This document shows positions 1 through 64,000 of a stretch of DNA of 64,000 nt, piece after piece; positions within the stretch are counted from its first letter, which is position 1; every line of letters starts with the position of its first letter. The notes under the pieces were generated by a model that did no database searches, was not told the origin of the DNA, and was given only the letters and a program-made list of their open reading frames with translations. This stretch comes from Malacoraja senta (Eukaryota): assembly GCA_038087875.1 (NCBI GenBank), contig CM075977.1:111786001-111850000 (forward strand), read 5' to 3'. The position numbers and the translations under genes are program-made.

Positions 1-269
1 TCAAATTGATTTGTTCAATGTCCCCTTTGACATTCAAGACTGAAGTCTGCCCAGAACCAAATATCTAAAATTGCTCTCCGAGTGTTCCTCTCACAATTGT
101 CTTACAATAGATGCACGTTTATCAGTGTTTAAGATTGTATTTGTTGAATACATTTTATGTGCTGATTGACGATTAACTATTGGTGAAAATCAGAAGGGAA
201 CCCGTCCCGTCACGTTCCTTTGCTGCTTTGAATCCATAATAACAACTGAGAGGGCAGAGGGGCTACCAC

Positions 270-730
270 CTGAAACATTGACAACTGATTCGGGGCTACC
301 TCCTGCACCCACGTAGAACTCCCGGATTTAATTAGCGTCACAACTATTTTCCATACCGCACCCAAATTCACTTGGAACATCTCCGATATCTCCCTACCGT
401 TTCTTAATCTATCCGTCTCCATCACAGGAGATACACTATCAACCGACATCTACTATAAACCTACTAACTCCCACATCTACCTAGACGACATTTCTTCCCA
501 CCCTCCCTCCAGCCAAGACTCTATCCCCTACACCCAATTCCTCCGTCAATGCCGCATCTGTCCCTCATTAGGGTCTTCTCGATATCCCACAGCACACACC
601 ACATAGCCCTCTGACATTTCCGCCACATTTAACGGGATCCTACCACGAGCCATATCTTCCCATCTTCACCCCTATCAGTTTTCGGCAGAGACCGTTCCCT
701 CCGCAACTCACTGGTTTACACGTCCTTCCC
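270..730 (+). mobile_element. Penelope-like retroelement fragment (RT C-terminal region), deleted copy of 45470-46450
   Basis: Co-linear with 45470-46010. It is joined directly to a CR1 fragment by a deletion that removes the GIY-YIG part. Confidence 0.75.
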
Positions 731-965
731 GTTAATCCACAGATTAACAGCTCTGGGCGAAAATGTTTTAACTCATCTCAGCCATAAATGGGCTCCTTTT
801 ATTCTAAAACCGTGACCCCTGGTTTTGGACTCCCTCAACATCGGGAACTTTTTCCTGCATCTAGCATATACAATCGTTTCAGAATTTAAGAGTCGCTCAG
901 TATTCCAAAAGTCGGTTGCGTTTACATTGTATCATCAATTCTTCACTCACTATAAAGTGTTCCAG

Positions 966-1221
966 GTCTGGTTGATTCAGATTTGAGCACCCAAGAGGAG
1001 GGTCCGCTCACACATACAGAGGGTCAAAGCGCCACTTTCACATGTACCTATTCTAAGGATAATTATTACTTACACTGGTATCGCCAGTATTCAGCCGGAC
1101 AGCCGAGTTTGGGGTTCGGCGATACACTAACGGTGGCTCATACCAGAAGGCAGAATTCGCTCGAAATAGTTTTTCGGACGCGTCAGACTGATACGGCAGT
1201 ATATTTCTGCGCAGTGCATCA
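966..1221 (+). pseudogene. TRDV-like: TCR delta/alpha V segment pseudogene (copy A)
   Basis: Phase-1 acceptor TTCCAG|GT at 964-965. Translation LVDSDLSTQEEGPLTHTEGQSATFTCTYSKDNYYLHWYRQYSAGQP..DTAVYFCAV has Ig V-set Cys, WYRQ and DxAxYxC motifs. It has a frameshift after QP and a 47-nt deletion versus copy B. No leader exon found. Confidence 0.88.
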
Positions 1222-1260
1222 CATAGTGTTGAGATTGGCGAGAATTTCAAGCGCACAGCT
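1222..1260 (+). other. Degenerate 23-spacer recombination signal sequence
   Basis: CATAGTG (CACAGTG in the paralog) directly after the V, then 23 nt, then a poor nonamer CGCACAGCT. Confidence 0.6.
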
Positions 1261-3448
1261 GCTATCTCGTGGATGATTTGGTTCATTGCGGCTTGGGCAG
1301 CTGCCACGAAGCTCACAGCTTGTGTGCGGGTAACAGAAGCAGTCAGAGCCGGATTGACACAGCGTCTTGTCTGCCTATTTCTGCGAGATATCGGGAGAAA
1401 CCACTTTTCCATTGAAAATAAATTGACGCCAAACTCGTTCATTTAGGAGACCCACTACTTCGCAAAAGATAAACTTTCGTCCAATGAGGGAATAAATACT
1501 TCTTAAAGTATATATCGCTAGAGGAACAGAAAGGAGGCCGATGACCAAAAAAATAATGCAGATGCTTCTAAGTTAACCATGTTCTTGATCTTGCGGTCAA
1601 ACTCCGCGTTTATTAACTCATGACTGCTTCTTGCGAACAGAATGTATTCCTGTATCCACCCGGGTGGCTGTTTTCTTGAAACACAGACTGATCAGAGCAA
1701 TCAATTAAAATAAAACGATGGCCTTAAAACTGACTAAACTTTGTTGCCTTCCACCACAGTGAAAAATGCTGTGGTGGATGTTTGTGTTAAATGTTATTGT
1801 GCATTGTGTGTTCTTTTTAAGTGTATCGCTGCTGGCAAAATCATTTCACTGCACCTTCGGGTGCATAGGACGAATACAATTGAGTTTCTTTTTGACTTTG
1901 ACCTAACCGAAGGAGAGGTTGAGGCAGTTGGTTCTTTACTCTACTAAGTATTTATTTTATCGTTTTATTAGAGCGTATACATGTACTTCATGATTATCAT
2001 GCTGGATAATACACTCATCCATTTGTACTTCATTCCGAATTCTGTATTATAACCTAACAGTATAACGACAGTAAGATGATCACTGTAGCCGGATATTTTG
2101 ATCAGGTTGAATAATAATTATAAGCCTCCACGATGCGGGCGAAACAGCCTAGAGGGTTATAATCGAGATTCGATTGGGAACTGACAACGGACGGTTGGCA
2201 AGCAGGTACGGCATAGTGTGCTCACTCGTAGTCCCAAATGGTCCGCAGAACGGCAGAATAGTTTTTCGTCGGTAGCACGGAGGGCACGACCACGTCTGAC
2301 AGCAACAAATTAGATGGGAGTTTGGTAGAGGTGTGTGAACATGCATATCTAACACAGGCATCGTAAGGCACGGGCAGGTAAATTAACGGACAGGGGATGA
2401 GAACCCCAATCAAATTTACACCGTCAGCAAGTCTTTTGTCTTCCGCTATTGAATGCCATAATGCGGCTTGTTGCGAATGGTTGTTGATATCACTTCTGCT
2501 GAAGGTCCCACAGTACAGAACCGAAGTACAAGGAAGTTATGCCCGATTTGTTAACACACTCGCAGGGGGCTCTTTGCGTATTGCGCCCTGATCCTCTCAC
2601 GACATTACAAGGAGATGTGTCATACAATGGAAGGCGTAGAAGAGGCAAACTGGGACTTTCTATGCGGCAGGGAAGTACAGAATGAAACTGTGGGGTGTCG
2701 TGAGGCTTCAATGGAGAATGGTAGATCGACGCGGTACTGAACTGGGGTATTTTACCGAAATGCGAAATCCTGAGATAAAAACAAAGATGAATGATTACAT
2801 TTTATTCCGCAAATGTCCCAGGACCTGCTGACGATCTCCAGAATGATCTGACTTTAAATTCAATTTACTCCATCCGTCCTTCTTCCTTTCAAAGGTTCTG
2901 CTTGACCACTTGGGTGCACGTGCTGGATTAGGACCACATTCAAAGCATGCTTCGCATCTGTTGCACAGATTACAGCATTAAAACGGTAAAACGAGTATGA
3001 TTCACACAAGGAGAATTAACTAAACCAAAAATACATAAAACAATATATCTTGCAAATCGCTGAGATACAATAGAATACTGGTGCTCGAATATTGATGCAA
3101 AATTTAAAAGCTGTAGGGACTCCATTAAGACAAACCGTGACACGGCCTTGGCCGACTGCGTGAGGTCATTTCGTTCCGAATAGCCAGCAACCGGTCAGTG
3201 GAGACGAGTACGCGCGAGTTGACAGAATATAAATGTTGGCATAATTAAACGACTGTTAAGACAATACGATAATGACAGGATCATTAATTGTAGATGCCAG
3301 CGTTTGCTTTATTGCATTCATAACCATTAAATACAAGTACTTATTTAGAATTCCTAAAACGCGATTCATTTTTCTCGCAATCAAGTCAGTTGCATTGTGC
3401 TGACAATCCAGTGATTGCTATGACCCAGCGCCCCCGCAAGGTAGGAGT

Positions 3449-3540
3449 CTGAAGAAGGGTCTCAACCCGAAACGTCACCCATTCCTTCTCTCCGGAGATG
3501 CTGCCTTTCTCGCTGAGTTACTCCACCATGTTGTGTCTCC
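3449..3540 (+). mobile_element. Penelope-terminus-derived short repeat with minimal hammerhead-like core
   Basis: CTGAAGA-AGGGTCTCAACCC-GAAAC-GTC. The same repeat recurs at 35047, 39485, 49592 and 62541. Confidence 0.55.
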
Positions 3541-4141
3541 GACAAAAGAACAAATGGGCGCTCTGCTACAAAACGCACTTCCGTCACTCGAAAATGCCGA
3601 CAGGAACCTACGTCAAAAAGGCCCACCGGCGTCCAGCCGATCATGGCCGACGGGTGACGGCACAATTTCTCTCGTCTGGCGGGCTATCGCTGTACCTAAG
3701 AGTGCACGTTGTGAAATAGTGTCCTGAATAACGGTCAGTGCAAATGATAAACAGATTCACCATCCTGCGTGCACACTTCCGTTCGACTAAAATACACGAA
3801 TATATTCACGACAAGAAGTGATTGATCCGGCATCGATAAACAGTTCTGCTGGACCAACGGCAAAATCAGATCTTCACCTATGAGGTGAACTCCATGAGAC
3901 AGAACAGGACCCACGGAAATACACAGAGCAACGGGATTATGGTAAGATAACGAGATAGTATCCTTTATCCCAAAGAAAGATTTTAGTTCGTTGCAAAATG
4001 TATAGAAAATGGCAAATTCTATCTAAAACGCGTTAACATACTTGCAAAGTAGAACTATCTTAAAGGTAATATATTCAATGTGAACTGCGATTGAGGATGG
4101 TAATTTAAATGGCGATTGGCCCTGCTATCACAGGCACTAAT

Positions 4142-6427: not shown

Positions 6428-6708
6428 ACTCAGAGCGCAGTAATAAACTGCAGAGACGCGCAGGTTCAGCGCCGAGATGGTCAAGCTGCTGAATTAGGTC
6501 ACGGGCGGACCTCGGCTGTGAAATGTATTCCCGTTGCATGTTGGTGATGCCACCGGACAGCAAAAATTCGACCTCTGTTCCCAGGCGTTACCGGTACGGA
6601 ATAAATAACATATACTCGCTATCGTATTATAGTTTAAAGTCATGCGGTCTACTTTATCCTTTACTCCAGAGGACAGGGGTTGAGTGAGAGAATCTCCCTG
6701 ACACCAAT
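6428..6708 (-). pseudogene. TRAV/TRDV-like: Inverted TCR alpha/delta V exon pseudogene
   Basis: Minus-strand acceptor TTACAG| then (D)WCQGDSLTQPLSS.., YR*RLGTEVEFLL, and FSSLTISALNLRVSAVYYCALS. Several stops and frameshifts; the RSS is replaced by CR1. Confidence 0.82.
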
Positions 6709-8775: not shown

Positions 8776-10620
8776 TCCTCCCCTCATCAACGCTGATGTA
8801 AAGTACAACGCACCATCGGAATAACATTTAAAACTAACTTTCCATGCAGATGGGGTCGCCCAAGCTTCCTCACCAAACGTCCTATGAAGGGTGGTGTGCA
8901 TAATGAACGGAGGAGGTACTTGAGGCAAGTAAAACAATAACGTTTGAGATACATGTGGGTCTACATGAGTTAGATAGGTTTAGAGGGCTATATATCGAGC
9001 CTGGGCTGGTGGGACGAGCGTAAATTGAGCATGATGGTCAGAGTGGACAAGTTCGGCCCGATGGCCTGTTTCCACCCTGTATGACTCTCTGCCAATACGA
9101 CTGTATGAGATCCCCCCTCTCCTGCAGAATGTAAATAAGACCATTCACAAAAACATTTAAACTTTATTTTTCAACAGGGCCTCCTGAAAAAACCTGGGAT
9201 AAAATTGATAATGGGTAGATGTGTATGGATTAGGTCAGTGTCTGGGAACTGTAGTTCAAGGTCTCGACATAAACTATTTCAAAGTACCCTGTGTTGTTGG
9301 CTGATATTTCTGTATGACCTTTCTACACCTGCAACCTCGGGGAATATATTTAAATTTAGAAATATTACACGCTATCCTACTTTACAATTCCTTTGTTCTG
9401 TACGTGCTCAATTGGTGCACAGGGGATGAGCGGCCACACTAATGAGTGTTGTGGTATAACATCACAAGGGAGCAAAATCCGTAATATATTTCCACAGGGA
9501 GGTGATCTCAACAAGTCGTTAATGTTTTCATTGGATACTAGACTAAGTGAGACCCTTTGGGTCCCAGCTTCACACGGGAGGGCTGGTCCCCCAGCGCAAT
9601 ATTCCACCTCTCCACCAATTCCAATATTGCTGGCCAGTTGAGGGGGGGGCTATCTGGAACGTTAGAATGGGTGTTGTGTGCCGAAGGGACTGGTTTCCAG
9701 AGGGCTAGTATGGACATTTTGGGCCGAATGGGATCTTGGGCTGGCAGCTCCGTCACTGAGGCCTGGCAGCTGAGCCACTCAGGCCTAGCAGGCTGTCAGC
9801 TCAGTAACTCAGGCCTGGCGGGCTGGCAGCTCAGAAACTGCCAGAAATTCTGCCGAAAACAGGTGACATACTCTATGAGAGAGAAGGGGGGGAGGGTGAA
9901 CATCCAATTTTAGACATTTTCATCTTTTTTTAGATCACAGCAATGAAAGAGGAAAGTCTATCCTTGCGTGGATCTCTGGAACGCTATTACGGATGTTGTA
10001 GGCTGAAGGGACAGGTTTCTAGAGGGCAGTATGGACATTGTGGACTGAATGGATTCTTGGACTTGCAGTTCAGTGAGTCACGGCTGGTGGGCTGGCAGTT
10101 CATGGCTGGTGGGCTGGCACTTCAGTCACTTACAGCTTTTGGGTTGGCAGTTCACTTACTCGTGGCGGGTGGGCTGGCAGTCCAGTCACTCACGGCTGGT
10201 GTGGTGGCAGTTCACTCAGTCACCCCTCCTCCCTTCACCCTCCACTCTGCTCGTTGCCATTCCCCTCCCCCCTCGCATCCAGTCCATCTCCCCTCAACCT
10301 CCCCCCATGCACACTTAGTTGCTCTCCGACAGCGCAGCCATTCCTACCTATTAGGTACACATTGCGATTAAGAACACGCAGGCATGGCAAGTGGAAAATG
10401 GATGTATTAATGTTTAAAATGTGAATCAATCTTAAAATATAACAACAATTGAAATGTTAAAGATGATTTAGTTCAGTTCTTTCTTGTTGTGTTCTGCTGC
10501 TCACTGCCGCTTGATGCCTCTTTGCTGTTCATTTAAAAAAAAGAGACAATTTTAATACAGAGAGATTGAGCGGTCAAATTTTAACAAAGAAAATCTGAGA
10601 TTTTACCTCGAAAGTCATCA

Positions 10621-10778
10621 TACAGTGCAGGCAGTGTCACAGCACATCAAGCAGATTGCAGGCAGCAAAACCAATGTCACGGCACTTCAAGCAGAGTGCA
10701 GGCAGCAAATCCAATTTCACAGCACTTCAAGCAGAGTGTAGGCAGCAAATCCAATGTCACAACTCTTCTAGCAGAGTG
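10621..10778. repeat. 40-bp minisatellite running into an assembly gap
   Basis: About 3-4 copies of GCAGAGTGCAGGCAGCAAATCCAATKTCACAGCACTTCAA before the N run at 10779-11020. Confidence 0.9.
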
Positions 10779-11020
10779 NNNNNNNNNNNNNNNNNNNNNN
10801 NNNNNNNNNNNNNNNNNNNNNNNNNNNNNNNNNNNNNNNNNNNNNNNNNNNNNNNNNNNNNNNNNNNNNNNNNNNNNNNNNNNNNNNNNNNNNNNNNNNN
10901 NNNNNNNNNNNNNNNNNNNNNNNNNNNNNNNNNNNNNNNNNNNNNNNNNNNNNNNNNNNNNNNNNNNNNNNNNNNNNNNNNNNNNNNNNNNNNNNNNNNN
11001 NNNNNNNNNNNNNNNNNNNN

Positions 11021-12400
11021 CACACACACACACACTCTACCACACACACGGCCTCCACCACACACACTCACACACACAGCCTCCACCTAATACACACTCC
11101 GCCACACACACACACACGCACACACACCCTCCACCACACACACACACACACTCCCACCACCACACACACACACCCTCCACCACACACACCCACACACACA
11201 CATCTCCACACACACACACACCCTCCACCAAACACACTCCACACACACACCCTCCACCACACACACACATTCCACCACACACACCTTCCACCACACACAC
11301 ACACCCTCCACCGCACACACACACGCATACCCTCCACCACACACTTACCCTCCACCACATACACACACACCCTCCACCAAACACACACCCTCCGCCACAC
11401 ACATACACACACACCCTCCACCACACACACACCCTCCAGCACACACACACCCTCCACCACACACACACAAATCCTTCACCACACACACACCCTCCACCAC
11501 ACACGCACCGACCCTCCAACACACACCCTCCACCACACACACGCACACCCTCCAGCATATGCACACACCCTCCACCACATACACACACACCATCCACCAC
11601 ACACACACACACCCTCCACCACACACACACCCTCCACCACACACACACCCTCCACCACACACACACATACACACACGCTCCATCACACACACACCCTCCA
11701 CCACACACACACACACACACTGTCCACCACACACACCCTCCACCAAACACACGCAGACCCTCCACCACACACACCTACACACACCCCCTCCACTACACAC
11801 ACCCACACACCACTACACACAAACACACACGCACACACACCCTCCATCACACATACACGAACACACACCCTCCACCACACACACACTCCACACACACACA
11901 CACACCCTCCACCAGACACACTCACGCACACATCCTCCACCATACACACACACCATCCACTAAACACACACACACCCTCCATTACACACACCCACACACC
12001 CCTCCACACACACACACACACGCACACACACCCTCCATCACACACACACACTCCACCACACACACACCACCCTCCACCAGACACACTCACACACATCCTC
12101 CACCACACACACACCATCCACCAAACACACCCACACCCTCCACCACACACACCCACACACACCCTCCACTACACACACCCACACATCCTCCACANNNNNN
12201 NNNNNNNNNNNNNNNNNNNNNNNNNNNNNNNNNNNNNNNNNNNNNNNNNNNNNNNNNNNNNNNNNNNNNNNNNNNNNNNNNNNNNNNNNNNNNNNNNNNN
12301 NNNNNNNNNNNNNNNNNNNNNNNNNNNNNNNNCTCACACACACATACAATCACACATATACACTCACACACCCACTCACACACACATACAGTCACACACA
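11021..12400. repeat. (CA)n / CCCTCCACCACACAC low-complexity array with internal gap
   Basis: Seen directly; N run at 12195-12332. Confidence 0.97.
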
Positions 12401-13757
12401 TGAAGTCTGTTTTGATGAAGCACGTTTCCGATGAATATTATTATTACCAAATCGTGGCATCAATTGGAGTGCCCGGTATGTCACTTGAAGGTTGAATGTG
12501 AGATAACCGTGACGACAATTGATTGGGGAACGGCAATGTTGGAGATGAAAAGACAATAGTGTGATGACATGTGCTGCATGCTAGGCTTTACCCATGGCAT
12601 GAGGTTAGGGCAACAACCAGTTAATGATAGTTATTTTATGCTAATAATATATTTGATCGTTGGCCATTTACTGGGACTCGTCGAGAATTATTACTGCATA
12701 TTGCCAAGTGAATTAACAGTCGAAGTAAACTGAGCGAAAAAAGGCTGCATCTGGTTATACCTTGGGCCATTGCATTTCCCCCATCTATTTTTGATTCCAT
12801 TTCATCTCTCTTTTTACTGCTCTAGATGTCGTTGATTTTAACTGTGGACTATCTTGAAAGACCGGCGCATCGCGTGCAGAGAATCTCGATTGTACACCGC
12901 CCACTTCAAACGTTGCAAACCCGGGAAGCAAATGCCGATCTGAAAGGTGCACCCGATTAACACTAACTTCAGTCTTGTTATACATACAACACTTCCGTTC
13001 AAACAGTTTCTCAGTTGATTAATTCACTGTTAGGTGGAATGTTTGTTCGTTGAGCGCAGTATCAGGGATTGCCTTCAAACCAAAGGAATCTCCGTCCATG
13101 CCATTCTTTTCCACCATTTTAGGAAAGTAAGCAAAATAACAATATATATACACCCATCATTCAACTCGAAGTTCTTCTCTGCGCATAATCACCATTGCTT
13201 CTTTTTTACTCCCCTGGTGAATCTAGTGGCGATTGTGATCCTGTCCTGAGCAAAGTGCGGTCTCTCCAAATGCATCACTCGTTACCTGGTGGCTATGGCG
13301 ACGGCGAACCTCACGGTGATTATCTGCGAAGTGATTTTAAATCGGATTGCCGATCTTTATTGGTGGAACACAATCCTGTTCTACACTCTTTGTGCAGGTT
13401 TATTCACGTCCTGTCCACCTCGGCCGTAGACTGTTCCGTTTGGTTCACGGTCGCTTTCACCTTTGATAGGTTTGTTGCTATCTCCAAACAGAATGTGAGA
13501 TCCATATCCACTGCACCGACACAACTGTTGTGGTTATGGTGACCCTATGTACCTTCTTCTGTTTACAGAACTGTAAAGACTTGTCAAACACGTAGTGTCT
13601 TCACTCTTAGTTTATTGCATACATTGTAGTCGTATACACACATATTGCCCTAGCTGTTCGTGGCCCGTTACCGGAGCTAGAGAGCGAGATAGGGGTGGGA
13701 AGGTTACAATTATACTGAAGATAATGGGGAGTGGTTAGTAGTGATGAGGTCATTATG

Positions 13758-26618: not shown

Positions 26619-26640
26619 TCTTTAATTCATCTATTCTATA

Positions 26641-46965: not shown

Positions 46966-47045
46966 TTAAGAGTCGCTCCGTATTCCCAAAGTCGGTTGCG
47001 ATTACTTTGTATAATCAATTCTTCACTCACTATAATGTGTTCCAG

Positions 47046-47341: not shown

Positions 47342-47380
47342 CACAGTGTTGAGAATGGCGGGAATTTTAAGCGCACAGCT
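47342..47380 (+). other. 23-spacer RSS with perfect heptamer
   Basis: CACAGTG at 47342-48, 23 nt, then degenerate nonamer CGCACAGCT. Confidence 0.7.
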
Positions 47381-50300
47381 GCAATTTCGTGGATGGATGT
47401 CGTTCATTGCGGCTTGTGCAGCTGCCGCGAATCTCACAGGTTATGTGCGGGGAGTAGAATCAGTCAGAGCAGATTTACACAGTGTCTTGAATCTGTCTAT
47501 ATCTGGTAGTGACTGCCTGTTTTCGGCGAGATATCTGGAGAAACCACTTCTCCATTGAAAATAAATTGACGCCAAACTCGTTCATTTAGGACACCCACTA
47601 CTTCGCAAAAGAGAAGCTTTCGTCCAATGAGGGAATACATACTTCGAAAAGTATCTCCCGCTATAGAAACAGAAAGGAGGCCGATGATCAAAATAATAAT
47701 GCAGATGCTTCTAAGTTAACCATGTCCTTGATCTTGCGGTCAAACTCTGCGTTTATTAACGCATTACTACTTCTTGCGAACAGAATGTATTCCTGTATCC
47801 ACTCGGGTGGCTGTTTTCATGAAGCAGAGACTGAGCAGAGCAGACAATGAAAAAAAACGATGGCCTGAAAACTGATTGAACTTTGTTGCCTTCCACCACA
47901 GTGAAGAATGCTGAGATAGATGCTTGTGTTAAATGTTCTTGTGTATTGTGTGTTCTTTTACAGTGTATCGCTGCTGGCAAATTAATTTCACTGCACCTTC
48001 GGGTGCATGTGACGAATAAAATTGACATTGACTTTGACTTTGACCTTACCGAAGGAGAGGTTGAGGCAGTTGGTTCTTTACTGCACTAAGTATTTATTTT
48101 ATCGATTTATTAGAGAGTATACATTTATTTCATGATTATCATGCTGGATAATTTACTCATCCATTTGTACTTCATTCCGAATTCCGTATTCCAACCTAAC
48201 AACATAACGACGGTAAGATAATCACTGTAGCCAGATATATTGATCAGGTGGAATAACAATTATAAGCCTCCAAAATGCGACTGAAACAGCCTAGAACGTT
48301 ATAATCGAGATTGGATTGGGAGCTGCCAACGGACGGTTAGCAAAAACGTACGGCAGAGTGTGCGCACTCGTCGTCCCAAATGGTCCTTAGAACTGCAGAG
48401 TAGTTTTTCGTCGGTAATTCGTAGGGCACGACCACGTCCGCCAGCAACAAATTAGATGGGAGTTTGATAGACGTGTGTGAACATGCATGTCTAACGCAGG
48501 CATCGTAAGGCACGGGTAGGTAAATAAACGGCGGATGAGAACCCCCAATACAATTCACACCGTCAGCAAGTATTTTGTCTTCCTCTATGGTATGCCATAA
48601 TACGGCTAGTTGCGAAGGGTTGTTGATGTCACTTCTGTTGAAGCTCCCAAAGTACAGAACCGAAGTGCAAGGAAGTTATGCCCGAATTGTTAACACACTC
48701 GCAGGGGGCTCTTTGCGTATTGCGCCCTGATCCTCTCACGACATTACAAGGAGATGTGTCATACAATGGAAGGCGTAGAAGAGGCAAACTGGGACTGTCT
48801 ATGAGGCAGGGAAGTACAGAATGAAACAGTGGGGAGACGTGAGGCTTCAATGGAGCAGAGTAGATCGACGCGGTACTGAACTGAGGTATTTTACCGAAAT
48901 ACGAAATCCTGAGATAAAAACAAAGATGAATGATTACATTTTATTCCGCAAATGCCCCGGGACCTGCTGACGATCTCCACAATGATCTGACTTTAAATTC
49001 AATTTCCTCCATCCGTCCTTCTTCCTTTCGAAGGTTCTGCTTGACCACTTGGGTGCACGTGCTGGATTAGGGCCACATTCAAAACATGCTTCGCATCTGT
49101 TGCACAGATTCCAACATTAAAACATTAAAACGAATATGATTCACACAAGGAGAATTAACTAAACCAAAAATACATAAAACAATACATCTTGTAAATCGCT
49201 GAGATACATAGACTGCTGGTGCTCGAATATTGATGCAAAATTAAAACGCTGTCGGGACTCCTTTAAGACAAACCGTGGCTCGGCCTTGGTCGACTGCATG
49301 AGGTCATTTCGTGCCGAAATAGCCAGCAACCGGTCAGTGGAGTCGAGTACGCGCGAGTTAACAGATTATAAATGTTAACATAATTAAACGACTGTTAAGA
49401 CAATAGGATAATGACAGGATAATTAATTGTAAATGCCAGCGTTTGCTTTATTGCATTCATAACTATTATATACAAGTGCTTATTCAGAATTACGAAAACA
49501 CGATACATTTTTCTCGCAATCAAGGGTGTTGCATTGTGCTGACAATCCAGTCAATCCATTTTATGACCCATCGCCCCCGTAAGCCAGGAGACTGAAGAAG
49601 GGTTTCAACCCGAAACGTCACCCACTGATTCTCTCATGAGATGCTGCCTGTCTCGCTGAGTTACTCCAGTATTTTGTGTCTCCGACAAAAGCACAAATGG
49701 GCTGCTCTGCTTCAACCTACAAAATGCGCTGCCGTCACTCGAAAATGCCGACAGGAACTACGTCAAAAAGGCCCACCGGCGTCCAGCCGATCATGGCCGA
49801 CGGGTTACGGCACAATTTCACTCCTGTGGCGGGCTGTCGCTGTGTCTAAGTGTGCACGTTGTGAAATAGTGTCCTGAATAACGGTCAGTACAAATGTTAA
49901 ACAGATTCACCATCCTGCGTGCACGCTTCCGTTTGGGTATAATGAACGAACATATTCACGACATACGTTTTAGGCAACACAGGTAGACCCGATAGAGTTT
50001 GTATCGAGACTCGGTAAAATGCAGAGCATGGGGCACATCCAATGGCAACGCAAACAACGTCGCTGTGTAGTGTACATACGTAGAAATGGCATTGTGGGAA
50101 ATATAACCACGTGCTGGTCAGCGAATACCAAGCGTCTGTAAAGTCCTAAGAACACACAGCCACACACTGGTGTAATGAAAGGTGACTCAAGGTGATGTAG
50201 TGTAATCAAGGAGAGGGTCTATTTAATATAGTGTGTAATAGCGCCGGGTGCAATGTAAAAACGAAAGAGCGATATGTAAATCCAATGGAGAATCCTCTCT

Positions 50301-51401
50301 GACAAAAGTGAAGCAAGGTATATTGAACGACAAGAAGAGATCGATCCGGCATCGATAAACAGTTCTGTTGGACCAACGGCAAAATCAGATCTTCACCTGT
50401 GAGGTGAAATCCATGAGACAGAACAGGACCCACGGAAACACACAGAGCAACGGGATTGTGGTAAGATAACGAGAGAGTATCCCTTATCCCAAAGAAGGAT
50501 TATAGATCATTGCAAAATGTATGGAAAATGGCTAATTCTATCAAAATCGCGTTAACATACTTGCAAAGTAGAACTACCTTAAAGGTAATACATTCAATGT
50601 GAACGGTGATCGAACATGGTGATTTGAATGGCTTTTGGCCCTGCTGGCACAGGCAATAATGTCCATATAGGCTGTGGGCCGTGGACCATTTTTTGTGCAG
50701 ATCCTTGCTGTATGTAGATTCAATAAATATGTGTTGTATCTTGAGGTGTGTTTGACGACTGATTACAACTACCTTACCAGAGATCCCACCTGAAATAACA
50801 TTCCCTACCCGTCTACCACACGGCATCTTGTCAATGGCCTTTCCAAAGTACATATCGGTAATATCTTCAAGGTTAACATTGTCTTGCAATCTGCCCTTGA
50901 TATTCACGTGGAACGGCGTATAAAATGCGAGAGTTTCATCGGCATTTTACATCCAGGAAAAAACACCCGGCAGACGCCTCATTCAAACAGTTGTATGTAA
51001 GTATCGTTGTTATCTCCCTTACCATGAATGGTTGACAGTATTTATGCAAGCGATCAACGGCAAACTGGAGGAGATGTTTACAAAAAACGAACAGGGTGGA
51101 TGCTTAACCTATTCCACTGGTCTTAACTGATGTTCCGAAGATGAGGAAATTTACCAGGGAAGGACTATTTGCCCAGGCATGTTATGATGCCGAGGCGAGC
51201 TGCGAGACGATTTTTCAACATTCTCCCTTAAATGTACGCATTAGCATCCGGGAAACCTTCTGTCATCGCACAAATGCAGAATCCCTCCCCACTGCTTTCT
51301 ATGTGAGCTAATCATAATCTGCGACACATGCCTTCATGTTTCACATAAGACAATACAAGAAAACACGTTTAGGTAGTGTAGAAAAAGTGAAATATGGGCC
51401 A

Positions 51402-55708: not shown

Positions 55709-56015
55709 GCTCCTTCAGGCATTCGGTGACCCAGAGTCCGACTGGGGTGACCGGGAAGAGCGTCACTCCTTTACGATCTCCTGCCGTTTTGGGATTTGTT
55801 CGCTAAGTTCAAACCGTTTTAACTCTGGACCCGTGTTCTAACATACCCAGCCCGTGGAAGAGCTGCAGCGGGTCATCGTAGGGGGACCATGTGTCGTGTC
55901 GACCTGTAAAGCGGACATGGCCATTACGCTGGAAATTCGGGACATGAGAGTTGGTGACAGCGCCAACTATCAATGTCAAGCTGCAGATAGCTGGATCGCA
56001 TGGGGTTTGAATATG
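55709..56015 (+). pseudogene. NAR-TCR V-like: NAR-TCR / IgNAR-type V exon pseudogene with a long 3' extension (candidate joined D)
   Basis: SVTQSPTGVT/EERHSFTISCRFGICSLSSNRFNSGPVF*HTQPVEELQRVIVGGPCVVSTCKADMAITLEIRDMRVGDSANYQCQAADSWIAWGLNM. Cys at 55782 and 55974, CDR1 Cys, short CDR2-less FR2 with xGG motif. One frameshift and one stop (55839). Confidence 0.8.
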
Positions 56016-58419
56016 CACATTGGAATGGGGCAGTGCTGGACCTCCTGTTAGGAAATGAGACAGGGCAGGTGGCGGAGGTAAGCGTTGGGGAGCTCTTCGG
56101 GTCCAGTGATCACAATACCATTCGTTTCAATATAATTATGGAGAGGGTCAGAACTGGACCTATGGTTGAGATTTTTGATTGGAGAAAGGCTAACTTTGAG
56201 GAGATGCGAAAGGATTTAAAAGGAGTGAATTGGGACATGTTGTTTTATGGGAAGGATGTAGAGGAGAAATGGAGGACATTTAAAGGTGACATTTTAAGAG
56301 TACAGAATCTTTATGTCCCTGTTCGGTTGAAATGAAATAGTAAAAATTGGAAAGAGCCATGGTTTTTAAGGGAAATTGGACACTTGGTTCGGAAAAAGAG
56401 AGATCTACAATAATTATAGGCAGCATGGAGTAAATGAGATGCTTGAGGAGTATAAAGAATGTAAAAAGAATATTAAGAAAGAAATTAGAAAAGCTTAAAG
56501 AAGATATGAGGTTGCTTTGGCAAATAAGGTGAAAGTAAATCCAAAGGGTTTCTACAGCTATATTAATAGCAAAAGGATAACAATAAGTAAAATTGGTCCA
56601 TTAGAGAGTCAGAGTGGACAGCTATCTGCAGAGCCAAAAGAGATGGGGGATATACTGAACAATTTCTTTTCTTCTGTATTCACCAAGGAGAAGGATAGGG
56701 AATTATGTGAGGTAAGGGAAACAAGCAGAGTAGCAATGGAAACTATGAGATTCAAAGAAGAGGAGGTGCGGACACTTTTGAAAAATATGAAAACGGATAA
56801 GTCTCCAGGTCCTGACAGGATATTCCCGAGGGCATTGAGGGAAGTTAGTGTAGAAATAGCAGGGGCTATGACAGAAATATTTCAAATGTCATAAGAAACG
56901 GGAATAGTGTCGGAGGATTGGCGTACTGCGCATGTTGTTCCGTTATTTTAAAAGGGTTCTAAGAGTAAACCTAGCAATTATAGATCTGTTAGTTTGATGT
57001 CAGTGGTGGGCAAATTAATGGAAAGGATACTTAAAGATAATATATACAAGCATCTGGATAAGCAGGGTCTGATTAGGAACAGTCAACATGGATTTGTGCC
57101 TGGAAGGTCATGTTTGACTAATCTTCTAGAATTTTTCGAAGAGGTTACTAGGGAAATTGATGAGTGTAAAGCAGTGGATGTTGTCTATATGGACTTCAGT
57201 AAGGCCTTTGACAAGCTTCCTCATGGAAGGTCGGTTAAGAAGATTAAATTGTTGGGTATTAATGGTGGAGTAGGAAGATGGATTCTATAGTGGTTGAATG
57301 GGAGATGCCAGAGAGTAATGGTGGATGGCTGTTTGTCAGGTTGGAGGCCGGTGACTAGTGGGGTGCCTCGGGGGTCTGTGTTGGGTCCACTGTTGTTTGT
57401 CATGTACATCAATGAACTGGATGATGGTGTGGAAAATTGGATTACTAAGTATGCAGATGGTACTAAGATAGGTGGTGTGGTGGATAATGAAGTAGATTTT
57501 CAAAGTCTACAGAGAGATTTAGGCCATTTGGAAGAGTGGGCTGAAAGATGGCAGATGGAGTTTAATGCTGATAAATGTGAGGTACTACATCTCGGCAGGA
57601 CAAATCAAAATAGGACGTACATGGTAAATGGTAGAGAATTGAGGAATGCAGTTGAACAGAGGGATCTAGGAATAACTGTGCATAGTTCCCTGAAGGTGGA
57701 ATCTCATGTAGATAGGGTGGTAAAGAAAGCGTTTGGTGTGCTGGCCTTTATAAATCACAGCATGAATATAGAAGTTGGGATATAATGTTAAAATTATACA
57801 AGGCATTGGTGAGGCCAATTCTGGAGTATGGAGTACAATTTTGGTCGCCTAATTATAGGAAGGATGTCAACAAAATAGAGAGAGTACAGAGGAGATTTAC
57901 TAGAATGTTGCCTGGGTTTCAGCAACTAAGTTACAGAGAAAAGTTGAACAAGTTAGGTCTTTATTCTTTGGAGCACTGAAGGTTAAGAGGGGACTTGATA
58001 GAGGTCTTTACAATTATGAGCGGGTTAGACAGAGTTAACGTGGATAAGCTTTTTCCATTGAGAGTAGGGAAGATTCAAACAAGGGGACATGACTTGAGAA
58101 TTAAGGGACAGAAGTTTAGGGGTAACATTAGGGGGGACTTCTTTACTCAGAGAGTGGTAGCTTTGTGGAATGAGTTTCCAGTGGAAGTGGTGGAGGCTGG
58201 TTCGATTTTATCCTTTAAAAAGAGATTGGATGGGTATATGGATGGGAAAGGAATGGAGGGTTATGGTCTGAGTGCAAGTAGATGGGACTAGGGGGTAGTA
58301 TTTATATATATTTTTTAAATTAAAAATTAAAAAATCAAAGGTTCGGCACAGACTTGAAGGGCCCAGATGGCCTATTTCCGTACTGTAATGGTTATATGGA
58401 ATGGAAGGGCGCATATAAC
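56016..58419 (+). other. 12-spacer RSS split by CR1 insertion
   Basis: Removing the CR1 and one copy of the duplicated TGGAATGG (56021-28 / 58397-404) gives CACATTG + GAATGGAAGGGC (12 nt) + GCATATAAC. Confidence 0.65.
56029..58396 (+). mobile_element. 5'-truncated CR1 LINE
   Basis: Consecutive ORF2 fragments (LDLLLGNE..SDHN, KSPGPD, QHGF, PRGSVLGP, YADG) and a GGTTATATGG tail. Flanked by the TGGAATGG duplication. Confidence 0.93.
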
Positions 58420-58733: not shown

Positions 58734-58830
58734 TTTTATTTTACCGGGAAGACTGAGGGCTGGATCACTGTGTATGACTGCCGTGCATACTATAAAAACG
58801 GAGCCGGGACAAGCTTGACTTTCACGGCCG
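58734..58830 (+). pseudogene. NAR-TCR J-like: J segment (58773-58830) with 23-spacer RSS; splice donor mutated
   Basis: T-rich nonamer TTTTATTTT, 23 nt, perfect CACTGTG (58766-72), then YDCRAYYKNGAGTSLTFTA (GxGTxLT J motif). The phase-1 donor reads GAAAGC (GTAAGC with T>A). Confidence 0.82.
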
Positions 58831-59649
58831 GAAAGCACCCTAAAAGCGCTCTTTATATTCCTTGCCCAGGAATAATCAGTGTAGTCTAAAATTGGGATCG
58901 TGTGACATCAATGTCCTTCTAAGTGAAGCAACCCCAATTTCTAAATTCATCTTGCAAAATGGCCCATGGCTATGTTCGCGGAGGGCGACAGGTCTGGTGT
59001 GAGACCCGAGAGAGCAGACTGGTGCACTTCTGAAGCAGAAGGATTGTGGATTTTCAGGACAATAAATGACAGACATGTCAGCCATGCACGCACACCAGTA
59101 AAAGGAAAAAAATAAACGGAGCACCAGAGCGTTGGGCTGCACACTGATGTTCGTCCCAAGTGTTAATTAGCAGAAAATGATGGGGTTATACGAGTTCCCC
59201 AGCTGGGGTTGTTTGGGGAACGGGTAAGACATACCGATTCTGAACGTTCTCAAATCCAAGAGATAGCTGATGTGAGGGGTGTCCAATGGGGAACGGCTTT
59301 AGGATGGGTCCACGTGCTCTATGAGTGTGAGAATACTGGATGCAATCTCTTTATTGTTTACAATCCACCGAGCAAAGTTGATAGGGTAGACGCTGAGCTG
59401 TGAGTAAGTCGGAAACCCCCGCGAAAACAGCATAGACTCAAAGCAACTGACAACTGAATGCGGGAATGATTTTCAGGAGGAGAAAATATGAATCGTAGCG
59501 AGCGAGTGGCCAGAGAGGAAGTAAAATGGGATCTGGGGGACCTTGTTCTTGTCAATGAAAGTAAGCATGCAGGTACAGCAGGCAGTGAAGAAAGCTAATG
59601 ACATGTTGGCCTTCATAACAAGAGGAGTTGAGTACAATGCTTAAATACT

Positions 59650-60788: not shown

Positions 60789-61120
60789 AGGTGGACAAAA
60801 AGGTTTTTGGCAATTTAGCCTTTCATCAATCTTAGTATTGAATATAGAAGTTGGGAGGTCATGTTGCAGTTGTATAAGACGTTGGTGAGACCGCATTTAG
60901 AATATGTTGTTAAGTTCTCGGCATCATGTTATAGGAAATGTTTTGTCAAATTTGAAAGGGATCAGAAAAGATTTACGATGATGTTGCCAGAACTAGAGGG
61001 TGTGCACTATAGGGGGGAGGTTGAGTAGGCTGTGTCTCTATTCCATGGAGAGAAGGAGGATGAATGGTGATCAAAAAGAGGTGCATAAAATCATTAGAGG
61101 AAGCTACACAGAGACCCGTT

Positions 61121-62316
61121 CATAGAAACATAGAAACATAGAAAATATGTACAGGAATAGGCCATTCGGCACTTCGAGCCTGCACCGCCATTCAATATGA
61201 TCATGGCTGATCATCCAACTCAGTATCCTGTACCTGCCTTCTCTCCATACCCCCTGATCCCTTTAGCCACAAGGGTCACATCTAACTAACTCTTAAATAT
61301 AGCCATTGAACTGGCCTCAACTACCTTCTGTGGCAGAGAATTCCAGTGATTCACCACAGTCTGTGTGAAAAATGTTTTTCTCATCTCGGTCCTAAAACAT
61401 TTCCCCTTTATCCTTAAACTGTGACGCCTTGTCCTGGACTTCCCCAACATCGGGAACAATCTTCCTGCATCCAGCCTGTCCAACCCCTTAAGAATTGTGT
61501 AAGTTTCTATAATATCCCCCCTCAATCTTCTAAATTCTAGCGAGTACAAGCCGAGCCTATCCAGTCTTTCTTTATATAAAAGTCCTGACATCCCAGGAAT
61601 CAGTCTGGTGAACCTTCTCTGTACTCCCTCTATGGCAAGAATGTCGTTCCTCAGATTTGGAGACCAAAACTGTACGCAATACTCCAGGTGTGGTCTCACC
61701 AAGACCCTGTACAACTGCAGTAGAACCTCCCTGCTCCTATACTCAAATCCTTTTGCTATGAATGCTAACATACCATTCGCATTCTTCACTGCCTGCTGCA
61801 CCTGCATGCCTACTTTCAATGACTGGTGTACCATGACACCCAGGTCTCGCTGCATCACCCCTTTTCCTAATCGGCCACCATTCAGATAATAGTTTACTTT
61901 CCTGTTTTTGCCACCAAAGTGGATAACCTCACATTTATCCACATTATACTGCATCTTCCATGCATTTACCCACGCACCCAGCCTATCCAAGTCACAATGC
62001 AGCCTCCTAGCATCCTCCTCACAGCTAACACTGCCCCCCAGCTTCGTGTCATCCGCAAACTTGCAGTTGTTGCATTCAATTCCCTCGTCCAATTCATTAA
62101 TATATATTGTAAATAGCTGGGGTCCCAGCACTAAGCCTTGCGTTACCCCACTAGTCACTGCCTGCCATTCTGAAAAATACCCGTTTACTCCTACTCTTTG
62201 TTTCCTGTTTGCCAGCCAGTACTCTATCCTCATCAATACTGAACCCCCAATAACGTGTGCTTTAAGTTTGTATACTAATCTCTTATGTGGGGATTGTCGA
62301 AAGCCTCCTGAAAGTC
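61121..62316 (-). mobile_element. 5'-truncated CR1 LINE
   Basis: 316-aa ORF 61286-62236 with QGLVLGP and FADD; (CATAGAAA)n tail. Nested in an older CR1 fragment. Confidence 0.93.
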
Positions 62317-63025
62317 TTTCTAGAGTAGTTGCATCGGGGACCGGAGGACATAGGATTGCCCCTGATCTTTCCTCCTGAATAATTTAAATAAGTCCTCTCA
62401 AAAATAACTTTCTACTTTCTTTTTCATCAGTGCCGAGTAGAAACACCTGGAACGAAATTGAAAATGGGTAAAGGGATTAGGCCAGTGTATGGTAACTGTG
62501 GTTCAAGGTCTCCAAATAAAATAAACATAGACACAAAAAGCTGAAAATGGTCTCGACCCGAAATGCCACCCATTCGTTCTCTCCGGAGATGCTGCCTGTC
62601 CCGCTGAGTTATTTCAGATTTTTGTATCTACCTTCGGTTTAATACAGCATCTGCAATTCCTTCATACACACTCTACATAAATGATTTCATCGTCTCGTGC
62701 GTTGTTGACTGATATTTTTGTCCGTCCTTTCGACAGCTGCAACCTCGTGGAACATATTTAAATTTAGAAATATTATTAGCAAACCTACTTTACAGTTCGT
62801 TTGTTCCGTACGTGCTGATTTGGTGCATGTGCAATGAACGACTACCCTCGTGATTGATGTCGTATAACGTCACAGTGGAGCAAAATCCGTAATGAATGTC
62901 CACAGGGACGTAATCTCAATAAATCGTTAATCTTTTCCTTGGCTTATAAATGTTCAGTGGTTTAACCTCCCAATATAGCATCTGTAAGCTTTGTACTGGA
63001 TTTCAGAGTTCGTTGTTAAGGAGAA

Positions 63026-63095
63026 ATGGGTCGCCTGCAACACTTGTCGGTTGAATATTATTATTACCCAATTCTGGCAACAATTGGTGTGCCCG
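63026..63095 (+). CDS. GPR139-like: Exon 1 of a third GPR139-like GPCR (exon 2 lies beyond the window)
   Basis: MGRLQHLSVEYYYYPILATIGVP with a phase-1 GTAGGT donor. The intron is co-linear with 40043-40920 up to the window end. Confidence 0.88.
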
Positions 63096-64000
63096 GTAGG
63101 TCACTTGACAGTTGAAAGTTGGATGGACTTGACGACATTTGATTGGGAAACGGCAATGATGACAATAAAGTGTAAATAGTGTGACAAAATGTGCTAAATG
63201 CTAGGTTGCGCCATGGAACAGGGTTTGGGGAATAACCCACAAGTTATTGTATGCTTTAAATATATTTCATCGATTGCCGTTTACTGGGACTGGTATATAA
63301 TTGTTCTTGCATTATTGTTAAGAGTCAAGTCAAGAGTCCAGAGTGTATAATTGTCATATGTCCCGGAAGGGACAATGAAATTCTTACTTGCTGCAGCTCA
63401 ACAGAATATGTGAATATGTAATAATTCTATATAATGGTGAAAAAAGAAAAAGTTCAATGAATAACAAATATAGTGCAAATAGCACATAATAATATAGTAT
63501 TTTGCAGTTCAGAGCTCTTAGATGATTCGTTGTGTTTAATAGCCTGATGGCTGTGGGGAAGTAGCTGTTCCTGAACCTGGGCGTTAGAGTCTCCAAGCTC
63601 GTGTACCTTGTCCTTGATGGCAGTGGTGAGATAAGTGTGTGGCCAGGATGGTGTGGGGCCTTGATGAGTTTGGCTGCAGTGAAGTAACAGCCAAGTAAGT
63701 TGAGCGACAAAGGCTGCATCTTGTTTTACCTCGGGCGATTGCATTTCCCGCATGTATTTTTGTCTCCATCTGGTTTCCCATTTTATGGCTTTAAAGTTCG
63801 TTAATTTTAACTGTGAGATGACCGCATCGCGTGCAGGTAATCTCTATTATACACCGCCCCTGCAAACGTTGCAAACCCGGTAAGCAAATGCCGATCCGAA
63901 AGGTGCGCCACATTAACACTGATTTTAGTCTTGTTGTTCATACTACACTTCCGTTTAAACAGTTTCTCAGTTGATTAATTCACTGTTAGGTGGAATGTTT

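What the first reader, a model, noticed from the sequence alone, without database searches (positions are those of the whole stretch)
1..64000. GPR139-like GPCR genes co-amplified with TCR V segments as one tandem cassette
Seen: three same-strand GPCR paralogs alternate with V and J relics. The 3' flank of GPCR copy 2 runs into V copy B (47046), and the same V-bearing block opens the window, implying another GPCR unit upstream. The copy 1 3' flank matches until a BEL element cuts it. Every V, J and leader here is broken, yet GPCR copy 2 and exon 1 of copy 3 are intact. Inference: the unit under selection may be the receptor, with TCR segments hitchhiking. This would be a GPCR array embedded in or derived from the TCR alpha/delta V region, possibly lymphocyte-expressed and, if the locus still recombines, somatically deleted by V(D)J joining.
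Basis: partly seen in the sequence, partly recalled or inferred. Interest (0 to 1): 0.85.

Follow-up and report, generated by a model that had tools for sequence, protein, structure and literature searches.

The report
Receptor genes duplicated with dead TCR segments
In this skate DNA a membrane-receptor gene of a cartilaginous-fish-specific family has been copied several times along with neighbouring T-cell-receptor gene segments; those segments are all dead while the receptor is still kept intact, a new example of unrelated genes living inside an immune-receptor gene array.

Summary
The window carries at least four units of an old tandem segmental duplication. Its core is a two-exon GPR139-like GPCR gene plus a downstream block with a TCR alpha/delta-type V.

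- Copy 2 (39973-41980) is intact.
- Copy 1 is a pseudogene: stops, eight indels, and an LTR retrotransposon in exon 2.
- Copy 3 shows only an intact exon 1 before the window ends.
- All four V relics and the one J relic are broken.

The V-B block and the NAR-V/J lesions recur in the orthologous Amblyraja radiata locus. The V and J lesions are shared, so these segments died before the duplication and the species split.

The GPCR is constrained. dN/dS is 0.5-0.6 (p = 0.003-0.045). It has no indels where 5-7.5 are expected. It keeps 82 of 85 family-conserved residues.

Paralogs differ by 11-18% against about 9-10% between orthologs, so this is no assembly artefact.

V segments lie within 10 kb of GPCRs of one batoid-only clade in five of six outside loci (Amblyraja on two chromosomes, Leucoraja, Pristis). 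None were found at three cow-shark loci.

Lymphocyte expression and somatic deletion are untested. First-stage readers of this scan noted the same interleaving in more than ten other windows of this genome.

The parts
1..4141 (+). Unit 0: V block only (the matching GPCR would lie upstream of the window). It is homologous to 45202-50660.
   Evidence: Self-BLAST at 88-90% over 593 + 3166 + 342 bp. K2P to unit 2 is 0.110 and to Amblyraja L002 0.089.
971..1216 (+). psi-V-A: a TCR alpha/delta-type V pseudogene. It has the shared FR2 frameshift and a 47-nt FR3 deletion, and its RSS heptamer is mutated to CATAGTG.
   Evidence: Pfam V-set 33.1 bits, E = 6.9e-8; alignment A1; RSS read.
6431..6694 (-). 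psi-V-C: a degenerate V pseudogene on the opposite strand, with a stop and the first cysteine lost.
   Evidence: tblastn with the intact Leucoraja V (L009): 37% identity, E = 3e-8; frames read.
9119..9534 (+). Unit 1: the 5' flank of GPCR copy 1, homologous to 39234-39889.
   Evidence: Self-BLAST 82-86%.
10635..12400 (.). Copy-1-specific 40-bp minisatellite and (CA)n-like arrays that hold both assembly gaps (10779-11020, 12195-12332).
   Evidence: Tandem Repeats Finder. The equivalent interval in unit 2 is only about 90 bp.
12415..12474 (+). GPCR copy 1, exon 1. It is open and its splice donor GGTATG is present.
   Evidence: tblastn with P0001; sequence read.
13217..13571 (+). GPCR copy 1, exon 2, 5' part (pseudogene with a stop and frameshifts).
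   Evidence: tblastn; eight indels against copy 2.
13572..18316 (-). LTR retrotransposon inserted in exon 2 of copy 1. LTRs are 211 bp at 97.2% identity; termini TG..CA; 5-bp target duplication AGAAC.
   Evidence: Self-BLAST; junctions; Pfam rve integrase.
18317..18860 (+). GPCR copy 1, exon 2, 3' part (stops and frameshifts).
   Evidence: tblastn; dN/dS 0.87-0.94 against the intact copies.
18861..21497 (+). 3' flank of copy 1, homologous to the copy 2 flank and to Amblyraja L001/L002. The homology ends in retroelement sequence, and the V block is missing from this unit.
26638..34988 (-). Young LTR retrotransposon (LTRs 843 bp at 98.6%; 1251-aa gag-pol ORF) that fills the place where unit 1's V block would be.
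   Evidence: Self-BLAST; Pfam RVT_1 and RT_RNaseH.
39182..39972 (+). Unit 2: 5' flank and presumed promoter region of GPCR copy 2.
   Evidence: Homology to units 1 and 3 and to L001/L002.
39973..40042 (+). GPCR copy 2, exon 1 (MGRMLHLSVEYYYYPILASIGVP; donor G|GTATGT).
   Evidence: tblastn 87% to P0001; splice sites.
40043..41081 (+). Intron of copy 2. It contains a very high-copy interspersed repeat at 40220-40640.
   Evidence: Splice sites; depth of 1e5-1e6 in DNA runs of related species.
41082..41980 (+). GPCR copy 2, exon 2, intact. Together with exon 1 it encodes 322 aa.
   Evidence: Pfam 7tm_1, E = 3.3e-16; 88% identity to Amblyraja P0001; 82 of 85 conserved positions kept; pN/pS 0.50-0.60.
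41981..50660 (+). Unit 2: 3' flank of copy 2 running into the V block. It is collinear with Amblyraja L002 12044-18077 and with unit 0.
47051..47336 (+). psi-V-B: a TCR alpha/delta-type V pseudogene. It has the shared FR2 frameshift, a 6-nt and a 1-nt deletion, and TAA in place of the Tyr in YYC. The heptamer CACAGTG is kept, the nonamer is degenerate, and no leader exon is found.
   Evidence: tblastn; alignment A1; flanks.
55744..56028 (+). NAR-TcR-type psi-V (frameshift plus a stop shared with Amblyraja L002 6618-6902).
   Evidence: 91.6% nt identity to L002; 44% aa identity to the intact Amblyraja NAR-TcR V, E = 2.7e-11; frames.
56040..58397 (+). Non-LTR retroelement insertion that separates the NAR psi-V from its J. 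It is absent in Amblyraja.
   Evidence: RT-like ORFs at 56517-57785. L002 joins 6902 to 6895 without it.
58788..58835 (+). NAR-TcR-type J relic (YYKNGAGTSLTFTAGK). The heptamer CACTGTG is kept; the splice donor GT is mutated to GA, as in Amblyraja.
   Evidence: tblastn with the functional L005 J; sequence comparison.
62316..63025 (+). Unit 3: 5' flank of GPCR copy 3, orthologous to Amblyraja L002.
   Evidence: 87.8% identity to L002. K2P is 0.103 to L002 but 0.184 to copy 2.
63026..63094 (+). GPCR copy 3, exon 1, intact (MGRLQHLSVEYYYYPILATIGVP; donor G|GTAGGT). Exon 2 lies beyond the window end.
   Evidence: 91% identity to P0002; sequence read.

Best explanation
The window is a decaying stretch of a batoid TCR delta/NAR-TcR V-gene array. 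A lineage-specific clade of GPR139-like class A GPCR genes sits among the V segments in this array.

Inferred mechanism: unequal crossing-over between repeated units, the usual birth-and-death mode of V arrays. It copied blocks of about 12-15 kb, now 23-28 kb after transposon insertions. Each block held one two-exon GPCR gene and the neighbouring TCR segments.

Shown:
- The V, the NAR-V and the J carried disabling lesions before the copies and the two skate lineages separated.
- The copies are older than the split from Amblyraja.
- The GPCR reading frame has been kept by weak but significant purifying selection in several copies (copy 2, Amblyraja P0001 and P0002), while others died (copy 1).

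So the receptor is the only part of the cassette that is still maintained. The co-amplification itself is most simply a passive result of lying inside a duplication-prone array. A functional link to T cells is not required.
For: Structure and age:
- Tandem homology blocks of 84-90% identity over 0.3-3.2 kb.
- The same GPCR-plus-V order occurs in Amblyraja L002.
- K2P is 0.11-0.18 between paralogs and 0.09-0.10 between orthologs.
- Copies carry distinct transposon insertions, including one with a target-site duplication.

TCR segments dead early:
- One shared V frameshift in all three V copies.
- A shared NAR-V stop and a shared J donor loss.

GPCR maintained:
- pN/pS 0.50-0.60, Fisher p = 0.003-0.045.
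- Zero frameshifting indels in the 969-nt CDS against 5-7.5 expected from the flanking DNA, P about 0.0006-0.005.
- Intron mismatch 14.8% against 7.3% in the CDS.
- 82 of 85 positions that are at least 90% conserved in the family are kept.

Wider pattern:
- All V-linked GPCRs fall in one batoid clade (SH-aLRT 99).
- V or NAR-TcR segments lie within 10 kb in L002, L004, L005, L006 and L009.
Against: - Only unit 2 shows the GPCR and V blocks contiguous within the window. Unit 1 and Amblyraja L001 lack the V.
- An omega of 0.5-0.6 is weak constraint and may partly reflect past selection.
- No transcript evidence exists for any copy.
- The constant genes and the rest of the locus were not seen. 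This may be an orphon-like side array rather than the working TCR alpha/delta locus: Amblyraja has such arrays on two chromosomes.
Confidence: 0.8

Rival explanations
1. Functional coupling. The GPCRs are placed in the TCR V array because they share its regulation: lymphocyte or thymus expression, or germline V-region transcription or chromatin. V(D)J deletional joining would then remove them from T-cell genomes, and that loss would matter for function.
For: - GPCRs and V/NAR cassettes lie within 2-10 kb of each other in five outside batoid loci, some with intact RSS-bearing V genes.
- In this window the GPCRs are on the same strand as most V segments.
- In Amblyraja L002 the GPCR lies between a NAR V-J pair and a leaderless-looking V.
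Against: - No expression data. A polyA RNA run of a related species shows no spliced read.
- All local V and J segments are dead, so they cannot drive deletion here.
- Orientation varies at other loci: tail-to-tail in L005 and opposite strand in L009.
- Sister clades in a cow shark expand without nearby V segments.
Confidence: 0.1
2. Assembly artefact. The repeated units are falsely duplicated haplotypes or mis-scaffolded pieces joined across the two N gaps.
For: - Two assembly gaps lie in unit 1.
- No DNA run of the same individual was available; the best share of sampled words was 0.42.
Against: - Copies differ by 11-18%, far above haplotype divergence.
- They carry different transposon insertions and different lesions.
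- Copy 3 is closer to Amblyraja L002 (0.103) than to copy 2 (0.184).
- The gaps sit in simple repeats, and both flanks are collinear with unit 2.
Confidence: 0.02
3. All neutral. Every GPCR copy here is a dying gene, and copy 2 is intact only by chance. Nothing in the cassette is under selection.
For: - Copy 1 is dead.
- Omega is fairly high at 0.5-0.8 depending on the method.
- No expression was shown.
Against: - pN is below pS in all three intact pairs.
- There are no indels where 5-7.5 are expected.
- The CDS diverges half as fast as the intron.
- 82 of 85 conserved residues are kept.
Confidence: 0.08

Closest known systems
Olfactory receptor genes interspersed among mammalian TRAV genes (human OR10G2 and OR4E2; mouse Olfr1507-1509)
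   Same: [quoted passage not shown]
   Different: - In mammals there are two or three genes at the 5' edge of the locus. They are not amplified with V segments.
- Here a lineage-specific clade is repeated unit by unit with V and NAR-TcR segments.
- The receptor is not an OR. Its nearest solved relative is GPR139, at 28.5 bits.
Trypsinogen genes inside the TCR beta locus (from my own knowledge: Rowen, Koop and Hood 1996; not read here)
   Same: A non-immune gene family embedded in a TCR locus and multiplied by tandem duplication of locus segments.
   Different: The gene family, the locus and the lineage all differ.
NAR-TcR double-V cassettes of cartilaginous fish
   Same: - The window has a NAR-type V and J upstream of copy 3 and a V without a detectable leader downstream of copy 2.
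- Intact cassettes with the same parts lie beside sister GPCRs in Amblyraja L005 and Leucoraja L006.
- The general description of NAR-TCR is in PMC3457774.
   Different: - Here every part is broken.
- The NAR V-J and the downstream V are about 10 kb apart in Amblyraja L002 with a GPCR gene between them.
- The intact L005 cassette spans about 5.9 kb, including a LINE insertion.
Human GPR139 (solved structures 7VUG and others)
   Same: It is the best match among solved structures, with a rhodopsin-type 7TM fold. NCBI's automatic name for the relatives is 'probable GPR139'.
   Different: Only 28.5 bits (E = 9e-6). The window gene belongs to a chondrichthyan family of more than 1,200 proteins with lineage-specific expansions. 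This is no one-to-one ortholog pattern.

Membership tests
Rhodopsin-type (class A) GPCR | Match to the 7tm_1 profile over all helices, with an open reading frame | tested here: met
   Pfam PF00001: 60 bits, E = 3.3e-16, profile positions 2-260 of 260. The ORF is 322 aa with canonical splice sites.
GPR139 orthologs | Close, one-to-one sequence relationship to vertebrate GPR139 | tested here: not met
   Human GPR139 is the best solved match but scores only 28.5 bits, E = 9e-6. The relatives form large lineage-specific expansions. A true skate GPR139 ortholog was not fetched for comparison.
Chondrichthyan 'probable GPR139' expanded family, batoid clade | Groups with batoid members to the exclusion of shark and chimaera members | tested here: met
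   The clade of 10 batoid rows has SH-aLRT 99. The nearest member is Amblyraja P0001 at 89% identity.
Chondrichthyan 'probable GPR139' expanded family, batoid clade | Two-exon structure with a phase-1 intron in TM1, after 23 codons | tested here: met
   The same split is found in copies 1-3 and in Amblyraja P0001 and P0002, with GGTATGTC...CTAG boundaries.
TCR alpha/delta V gene segment (functional) | V-set domain with Cys23, Trp41 and Cys104 in one frame | tested here: not met
   psi-V-A and psi-V-B score as V-set or match V genes. Both carry the shared frameshift plus their own deletions and a stop. psi-V-C has a stop and lacks Cys23.
TCR alpha/delta V gene segment (functional) | Leader exon and a 23-RSS (CACAGTG, 23-bp spacer, ACAAAAACC) | tested here: not met
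   No leader lies upstream; a transposon tail ends about 80 bp 5' of the V. The heptamer is kept in V-B, mutated in V-A, and the nonamer is degenerate. No canonical RSS is found in the window. The intact Leucoraja V has both features.
NAR-TcR cassette | NAR-type V, then J with a splice donor, then a leaderless supporting V-delta with a splice acceptor and RSS | tested here: inconclusive
   All three kinds of part are recognisable, but each is broken. The NAR V-J and the downstream V are separated by the GPCR gene. Whether they ever formed one cassette cannot be told.
Working TCR alpha/delta locus | D, J and C delta/alpha genes in cis downstream of the V array | not testable with these tools
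   The window holds none. The scan's own notes (unchecked) place a broken NAR-TCR cassette and an IgM constant region about 38 kb beyond the window end.

The most novel reading that the evidence does not exclude
In skates and rays a whole clade of orphan, chemoreceptor-style GPCR genes has made the TCR delta/NAR-TcR V array its home. Some genes lie between a NAR V-J pair and the downstream V. In that position they would be transcribed, silenced or somatically excised together with V segments, so T cells would differ from other cells, and from one another, in GPCR gene content or expression. This would be a functional tie between a stochastically chosen receptor array and V(D)J recombination.
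Probability: 0.08. Interest if true: 0.85.

Novelty: new variant of a known kind. Interest (0 to 1): 0.5.

Why it matters
Antigen-receptor V arrays are known to harbour a few passenger genes: olfactory receptors in mammalian TRA and trypsinogens in TRB. Here the passenger is a whole, lineage-specific GPCR clade that has multiplied unit by unit with TCR delta/NAR-TcR segments. It outlives them under selection in at least two skate genera, and related cases occur in a sawfish.

This matters in three ways:
- It gives a natural case for asking how duplication-prone immune loci seed expansions of unrelated gene families.
- It flags an undescribed, very large 'GPR139-like' receptor family in cartilaginous fishes. 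I found no paper on it in the library searched.
- It warns annotators that V-region maps of batoids are interleaved with GPCR genes.

If the genes proved to be lymphocyte-regulated or somatically deleted, it would be a much bigger result.

Tried and rejected
- Canonical RSS search (CACAGTG, 11-24 bp spacer, ACAAAAACC): no match in the window.
- Motif scan for intact J segments with a heptamer: nothing. The one J relic was found only by homology.
- Protein database search with the Amblyraja V: one uninformative hit.
- Search of solved structures with the V: it matches both Ig VH and TCR V-alpha/V-delta domains, so it cannot assign the V type by itself.
- Sequencing runs: no run of the same organism (best share of words 0.42). 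The runs of unknown kind behave as DNA. The single RNA run (related species, 6% read) shows only transposon reads in the intron and a few reads on the conserved start of exon 2, with no splice joint. Expression is therefore unresolved.
- One run search failed and was repeated.
- Pfam gave nothing for the ORFs of the element that ends the copy 1 flank (22322-24634) or for the ORF at 45693-46427.
- Hypanus, Scyliorhinus and Stegostoma loci could not be read: no DNA was served or the protein was not on record.
- A weak NAR-like match at 36599-36736 (E = 0.054) was not accepted as a V relic.
- The Criscitiello 2006 and Ott 2021 papers on NAR-TcR were not held.
- The retroposed or transposon-borne GPCR idea was rejected, because all copies keep the conserved intron and the flanks are shared.


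Full report
**What is there**

The window is vertebrate DNA rich in retroelements. It has two assembly gaps, at 10779-11020 and 12195-12332. An intact 7TM reading frame lies at 41066-41980 (Pfam 7tm_1, E = 3.3e-16).

Its closest relatives are two Amblyraja radiata proteins at 87-88% identity. NCBI names them automatically as 'probable GPR139'. Behind them come more than 1,200 chondrichthyan proteins. An earlier follow-up note of this scan calls the genome a skate.

Using the Amblyraja proteins as guides, the gene has two exons. Exon 1 has 23 codons. A phase-1 intron of about 1 kb sits in TM1, with boundaries G|GTATGT...CCCCTAG|. Exon 2 has 299 codons.

The three copies, all on the + strand:
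- Copy 2 (39973-40042 plus 41082-41980) is intact and encodes 322 aa.
- Copy 3 has an intact exon 1 with its donor (63026-63094). Its exon 2 would lie about 100 bp beyond the window end.
- Copy 1 (12415-12474; 13217-13571; 18317-18860) is a pseudogene. It has a stop near codon 34 and further stops, and eight indels against copy 2. An LTR retrotransposon sits in exon 2 (13572-18316), with 211-bp LTRs at 97.2% identity, TG..CA ends and the target duplication AGAAC.

**The repeat structure**

Self-BLAST gives these matches:
- 1-593 = 45202-45795.
- 736-3813 = 46813-49963.
- 3801-4141 = 50319-50660.
- 9119-9534 = 39234-39889.
- 12707-13570 = 40594-41436.
- 18317-18967 = 41433-42082.
- 20241-21403 = 42326-43214.
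- 39496-40916 = 62549-64000.
- All are at 82-90% identity.

So there are four units:
- Unit 0 has the V block only.
- Unit 1 has a GPCR with its V block lost. The place is now filled by retroelements, including a young 8.3-kb LTR element at 26638-34988.
- Unit 2 has the GPCR plus the V block.
- Unit 3 has a NAR-V/J block plus the start of a GPCR.

The spacing between successive exon 1 copies is 27.6 kb and 23.1 kb. Much of that is later transposon insertion.

**The gaps**

Both gaps lie in copy-1-specific tandem arrays, a 40-bp minisatellite and degenerate (CA)n. They sit 5' of exon 1 of the dead copy. The DNA on both sides is collinear with unit 2.

The gaps therefore touch no coding feature and do not affect the inference. 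Their true length is unknown, and I did not try to fill them.

**The TCR parts**

*The V copies.* psi-V-A (971-1216) scores as V-set above Pfam's cut-off. psi-V-B (47051-47336) and the Amblyraja copy (L002 17214-17504) are its homologues.
- Aligned together (alignment A1), all three share one frameshift between FR2 'WYRQYPGGQP' and 'EF..'. An intact Leucoraja V reads straight through this point as 'WYRQYPGMQPEF'.
- V-A also has a 47-nt deletion and a mutated heptamer.
- V-B has 6-nt and 1-nt deletions and a TAA stop inside YYC.
- The Amblyraja copy has a 2-nt deletion that reopens the frame but garbles Trp41.
- No leader is found. A transposon tail shared by all three copies ends about 80 bp upstream of a splice acceptor.
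- A third, degenerate V lies on the minus strand at 6694-6431.

*The NAR-type parts.* Ahead of copy 3 is a NAR-TcR-type V (55744-56028). It has a frameshift and a stop, both shared with Amblyraja.
- After a window-specific retroelement insertion comes a J relic (58788-58835).
- The J heptamer is intact, but its splice donor is GA instead of GT in both species. The functional Amblyraja J has G|GTAAGT.

*Conclusion.* Every TCR element here is dead. The shared lesions show they were dead before the units and the two genera diverged.

**Age and reality of the duplication**

- Upstream block: copy 3 against Amblyraja L002 has K2P 0.103, while copy 2 against copy 3 has 0.184.
- V block: unit 0 against unit 2 has 0.110, and each against L002 has about 0.09.
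- The paralogs therefore predate the species split.
- With their different insertions and lesions, they cannot be haplotype or assembly duplicates.

**Is the receptor maintained?**

- pN/pS is 0.50 (copy 2 against P0001, p = 0.003), 0.60 (against P0002, p = 0.029) and 0.59 (P0001 against P0002, p = 0.045).
- Against the dead copy 1 the ratio is 0.87-0.94.
- Non-coding DNA between copy 2 and L002 carries 5.6-8 frameshifting indels per kb. That predicts 5-7.5 in the CDS, and none is seen (P about 0.0006-0.005).
- The intron differs by 14.8% and the CDS by 7.3%.
- Copy 2 keeps 82 of the 85 positions that are at least 90% conserved among 104 relatives. The three changes are conservative.
- The constraint is real but weak, as in fast-evolving receptor families.

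**Beyond the window**

Amblyraja L002 has the order NAR psi-V, J relic, GPCR P0002, psi-V at 86-91% identity to the window. Other batoid loci:
- A paralog on a second Amblyraja chromosome (P0024, locus L005) lies tail-to-tail with an intact NAR-TcR cassette: NAR V, J with donor, and a leaderless V-delta with a 23-RSS. Another NAR V lies upstream.
- Leucoraja L006 has a NAR V-J next to two GPCRs.
- Leucoraja L009 has an intact V with leader and canonical 23-RSS 2 kb downstream of the GPCR. It also has another V 8 kb upstream and the next GPCR exon 1 further on.
- Pristis L004 has two V-delta-like segments within 10 kb.
- Amblyraja L001 has none.
- Three Heptranchias loci (about 105 kb in all) have none.

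In a tree of 50 family members, every V-linked GPCR falls in one batoid-only clade (SH-aLRT 99). That clade sits inside a subfamily in which each shark lineage has its own expansion.

**What it is not**

Human GPR139 is the nearest solved protein, but at only 28.5 bits. The name is a label of convenience. It does not show orthology.

**Expression**

No run of the same organism was available.
- Runs of related species behave as genomic DNA.
- One polyA RNA run showed only transposon reads in the intron and a few reads on the conserved start of exon 2.
- It showed no splice joint.
- Expression, tissue and any somatic deletion remain untested.

**Comparison with known cases**

- Olfactory receptor genes lie among the 5' TRAV genes of human, mouse and sheep (PMC4574546).
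- From my own knowledge, trypsinogen genes are tandemly repeated inside TRB.
- A 2025 paper on the linkage of elasmobranch IgH isotypes near the TCR alpha-delta locus does not mention GPCRs (PMC12227049).
- I found no paper linking GPR139-like genes to cartilaginous fishes.

**Verdict**

- The reading 'receptor selected, TCR segments hitchhiking' is supported in its evolutionary part.
- The immunological part (lymphocyte expression, deletion by V(D)J joining) is only a possibility.
- This is a new variant of a known kind of arrangement, of moderate interest.
- First-stage readers of this scan noted the same interleaving in more than ten other windows of this genome. None of those notes shows a follow-up.

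Noticed in passing
window 40220-40640: The intron of GPCR copy 2 holds an interspersed repeat. Its word depth is 1e5-1e6 in DNA runs of related species, and it is also abundant in a polyA RNA run on both strands. It is probably a very high-copy SINE-like element of skates.
   Followed up: partly
window 26638-34988: Young LTR retrotransposon on the minus strand: 843-bp LTRs at 98.6% identity, an uninterrupted 1251-aa gag-pol ORF (RVT_1, RNase H) and further integrase ORFs. It may have been active recently.
   Followed up: partly
window 45000-46964 (ORF 45693-46427): This block occurs twice in Amblyraja L001 (14197-16182 and 19263-21251). It holds a 244-aa ORF with no Pfam match, so it looks like an unclassified repeat element rather than unique flank.
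   Followed up: partly
L002 1044-1499 (Amblyraja, upstream of P0002): An annotated 261-aa gene with a V-set domain that does not look like a rearranging V (no RSS context was examined). It may be a non-rearranging Ig-superfamily receptor next to the array. It has no counterpart in the window.
   Followed up: no
L005 17369-23296 and 7077-7337 (Amblyraja chromosome CM021380.1): An intact NAR-TcR cassette lies tail-to-tail with GPCR P0024: NAR V, J with donor, a LINE insertion, then a leaderless V-delta with a 23-RSS. A second NAR V lies upstream. NAR-TcR/GPCR arrays therefore exist on two Amblyraja chromosomes.
   Followed up: partly
L002 17214-17504 (Amblyraja): A 2-nt deletion in CDR1 compensates the ancestral frameshift, so this V is one open frame again. 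But 17 residues including the invariant Trp41 are garbled. It is an open but presumably non-functional V.
   Followed up: partly
about 38.6 kb beyond the window end (scan notes s1-140086, s1-140299): Earlier notes report a broken NAR-TCR cassette and an IgM constant region on the same strand. This would fit the published linkage of elasmobranch IgH clusters near the TCR alpha-delta locus (PMC12227049). I did not check it.
   Followed up: no
window 9950-10370 and 10635-12400: Long low-complexity tracts: 22-60-bp minisatellites and a 1.2-kb degenerate (CA)n that reads as THTHTH. They are inserted only in the promoter region of the dead copy 1 and caused both assembly gaps.
   Followed up: yes
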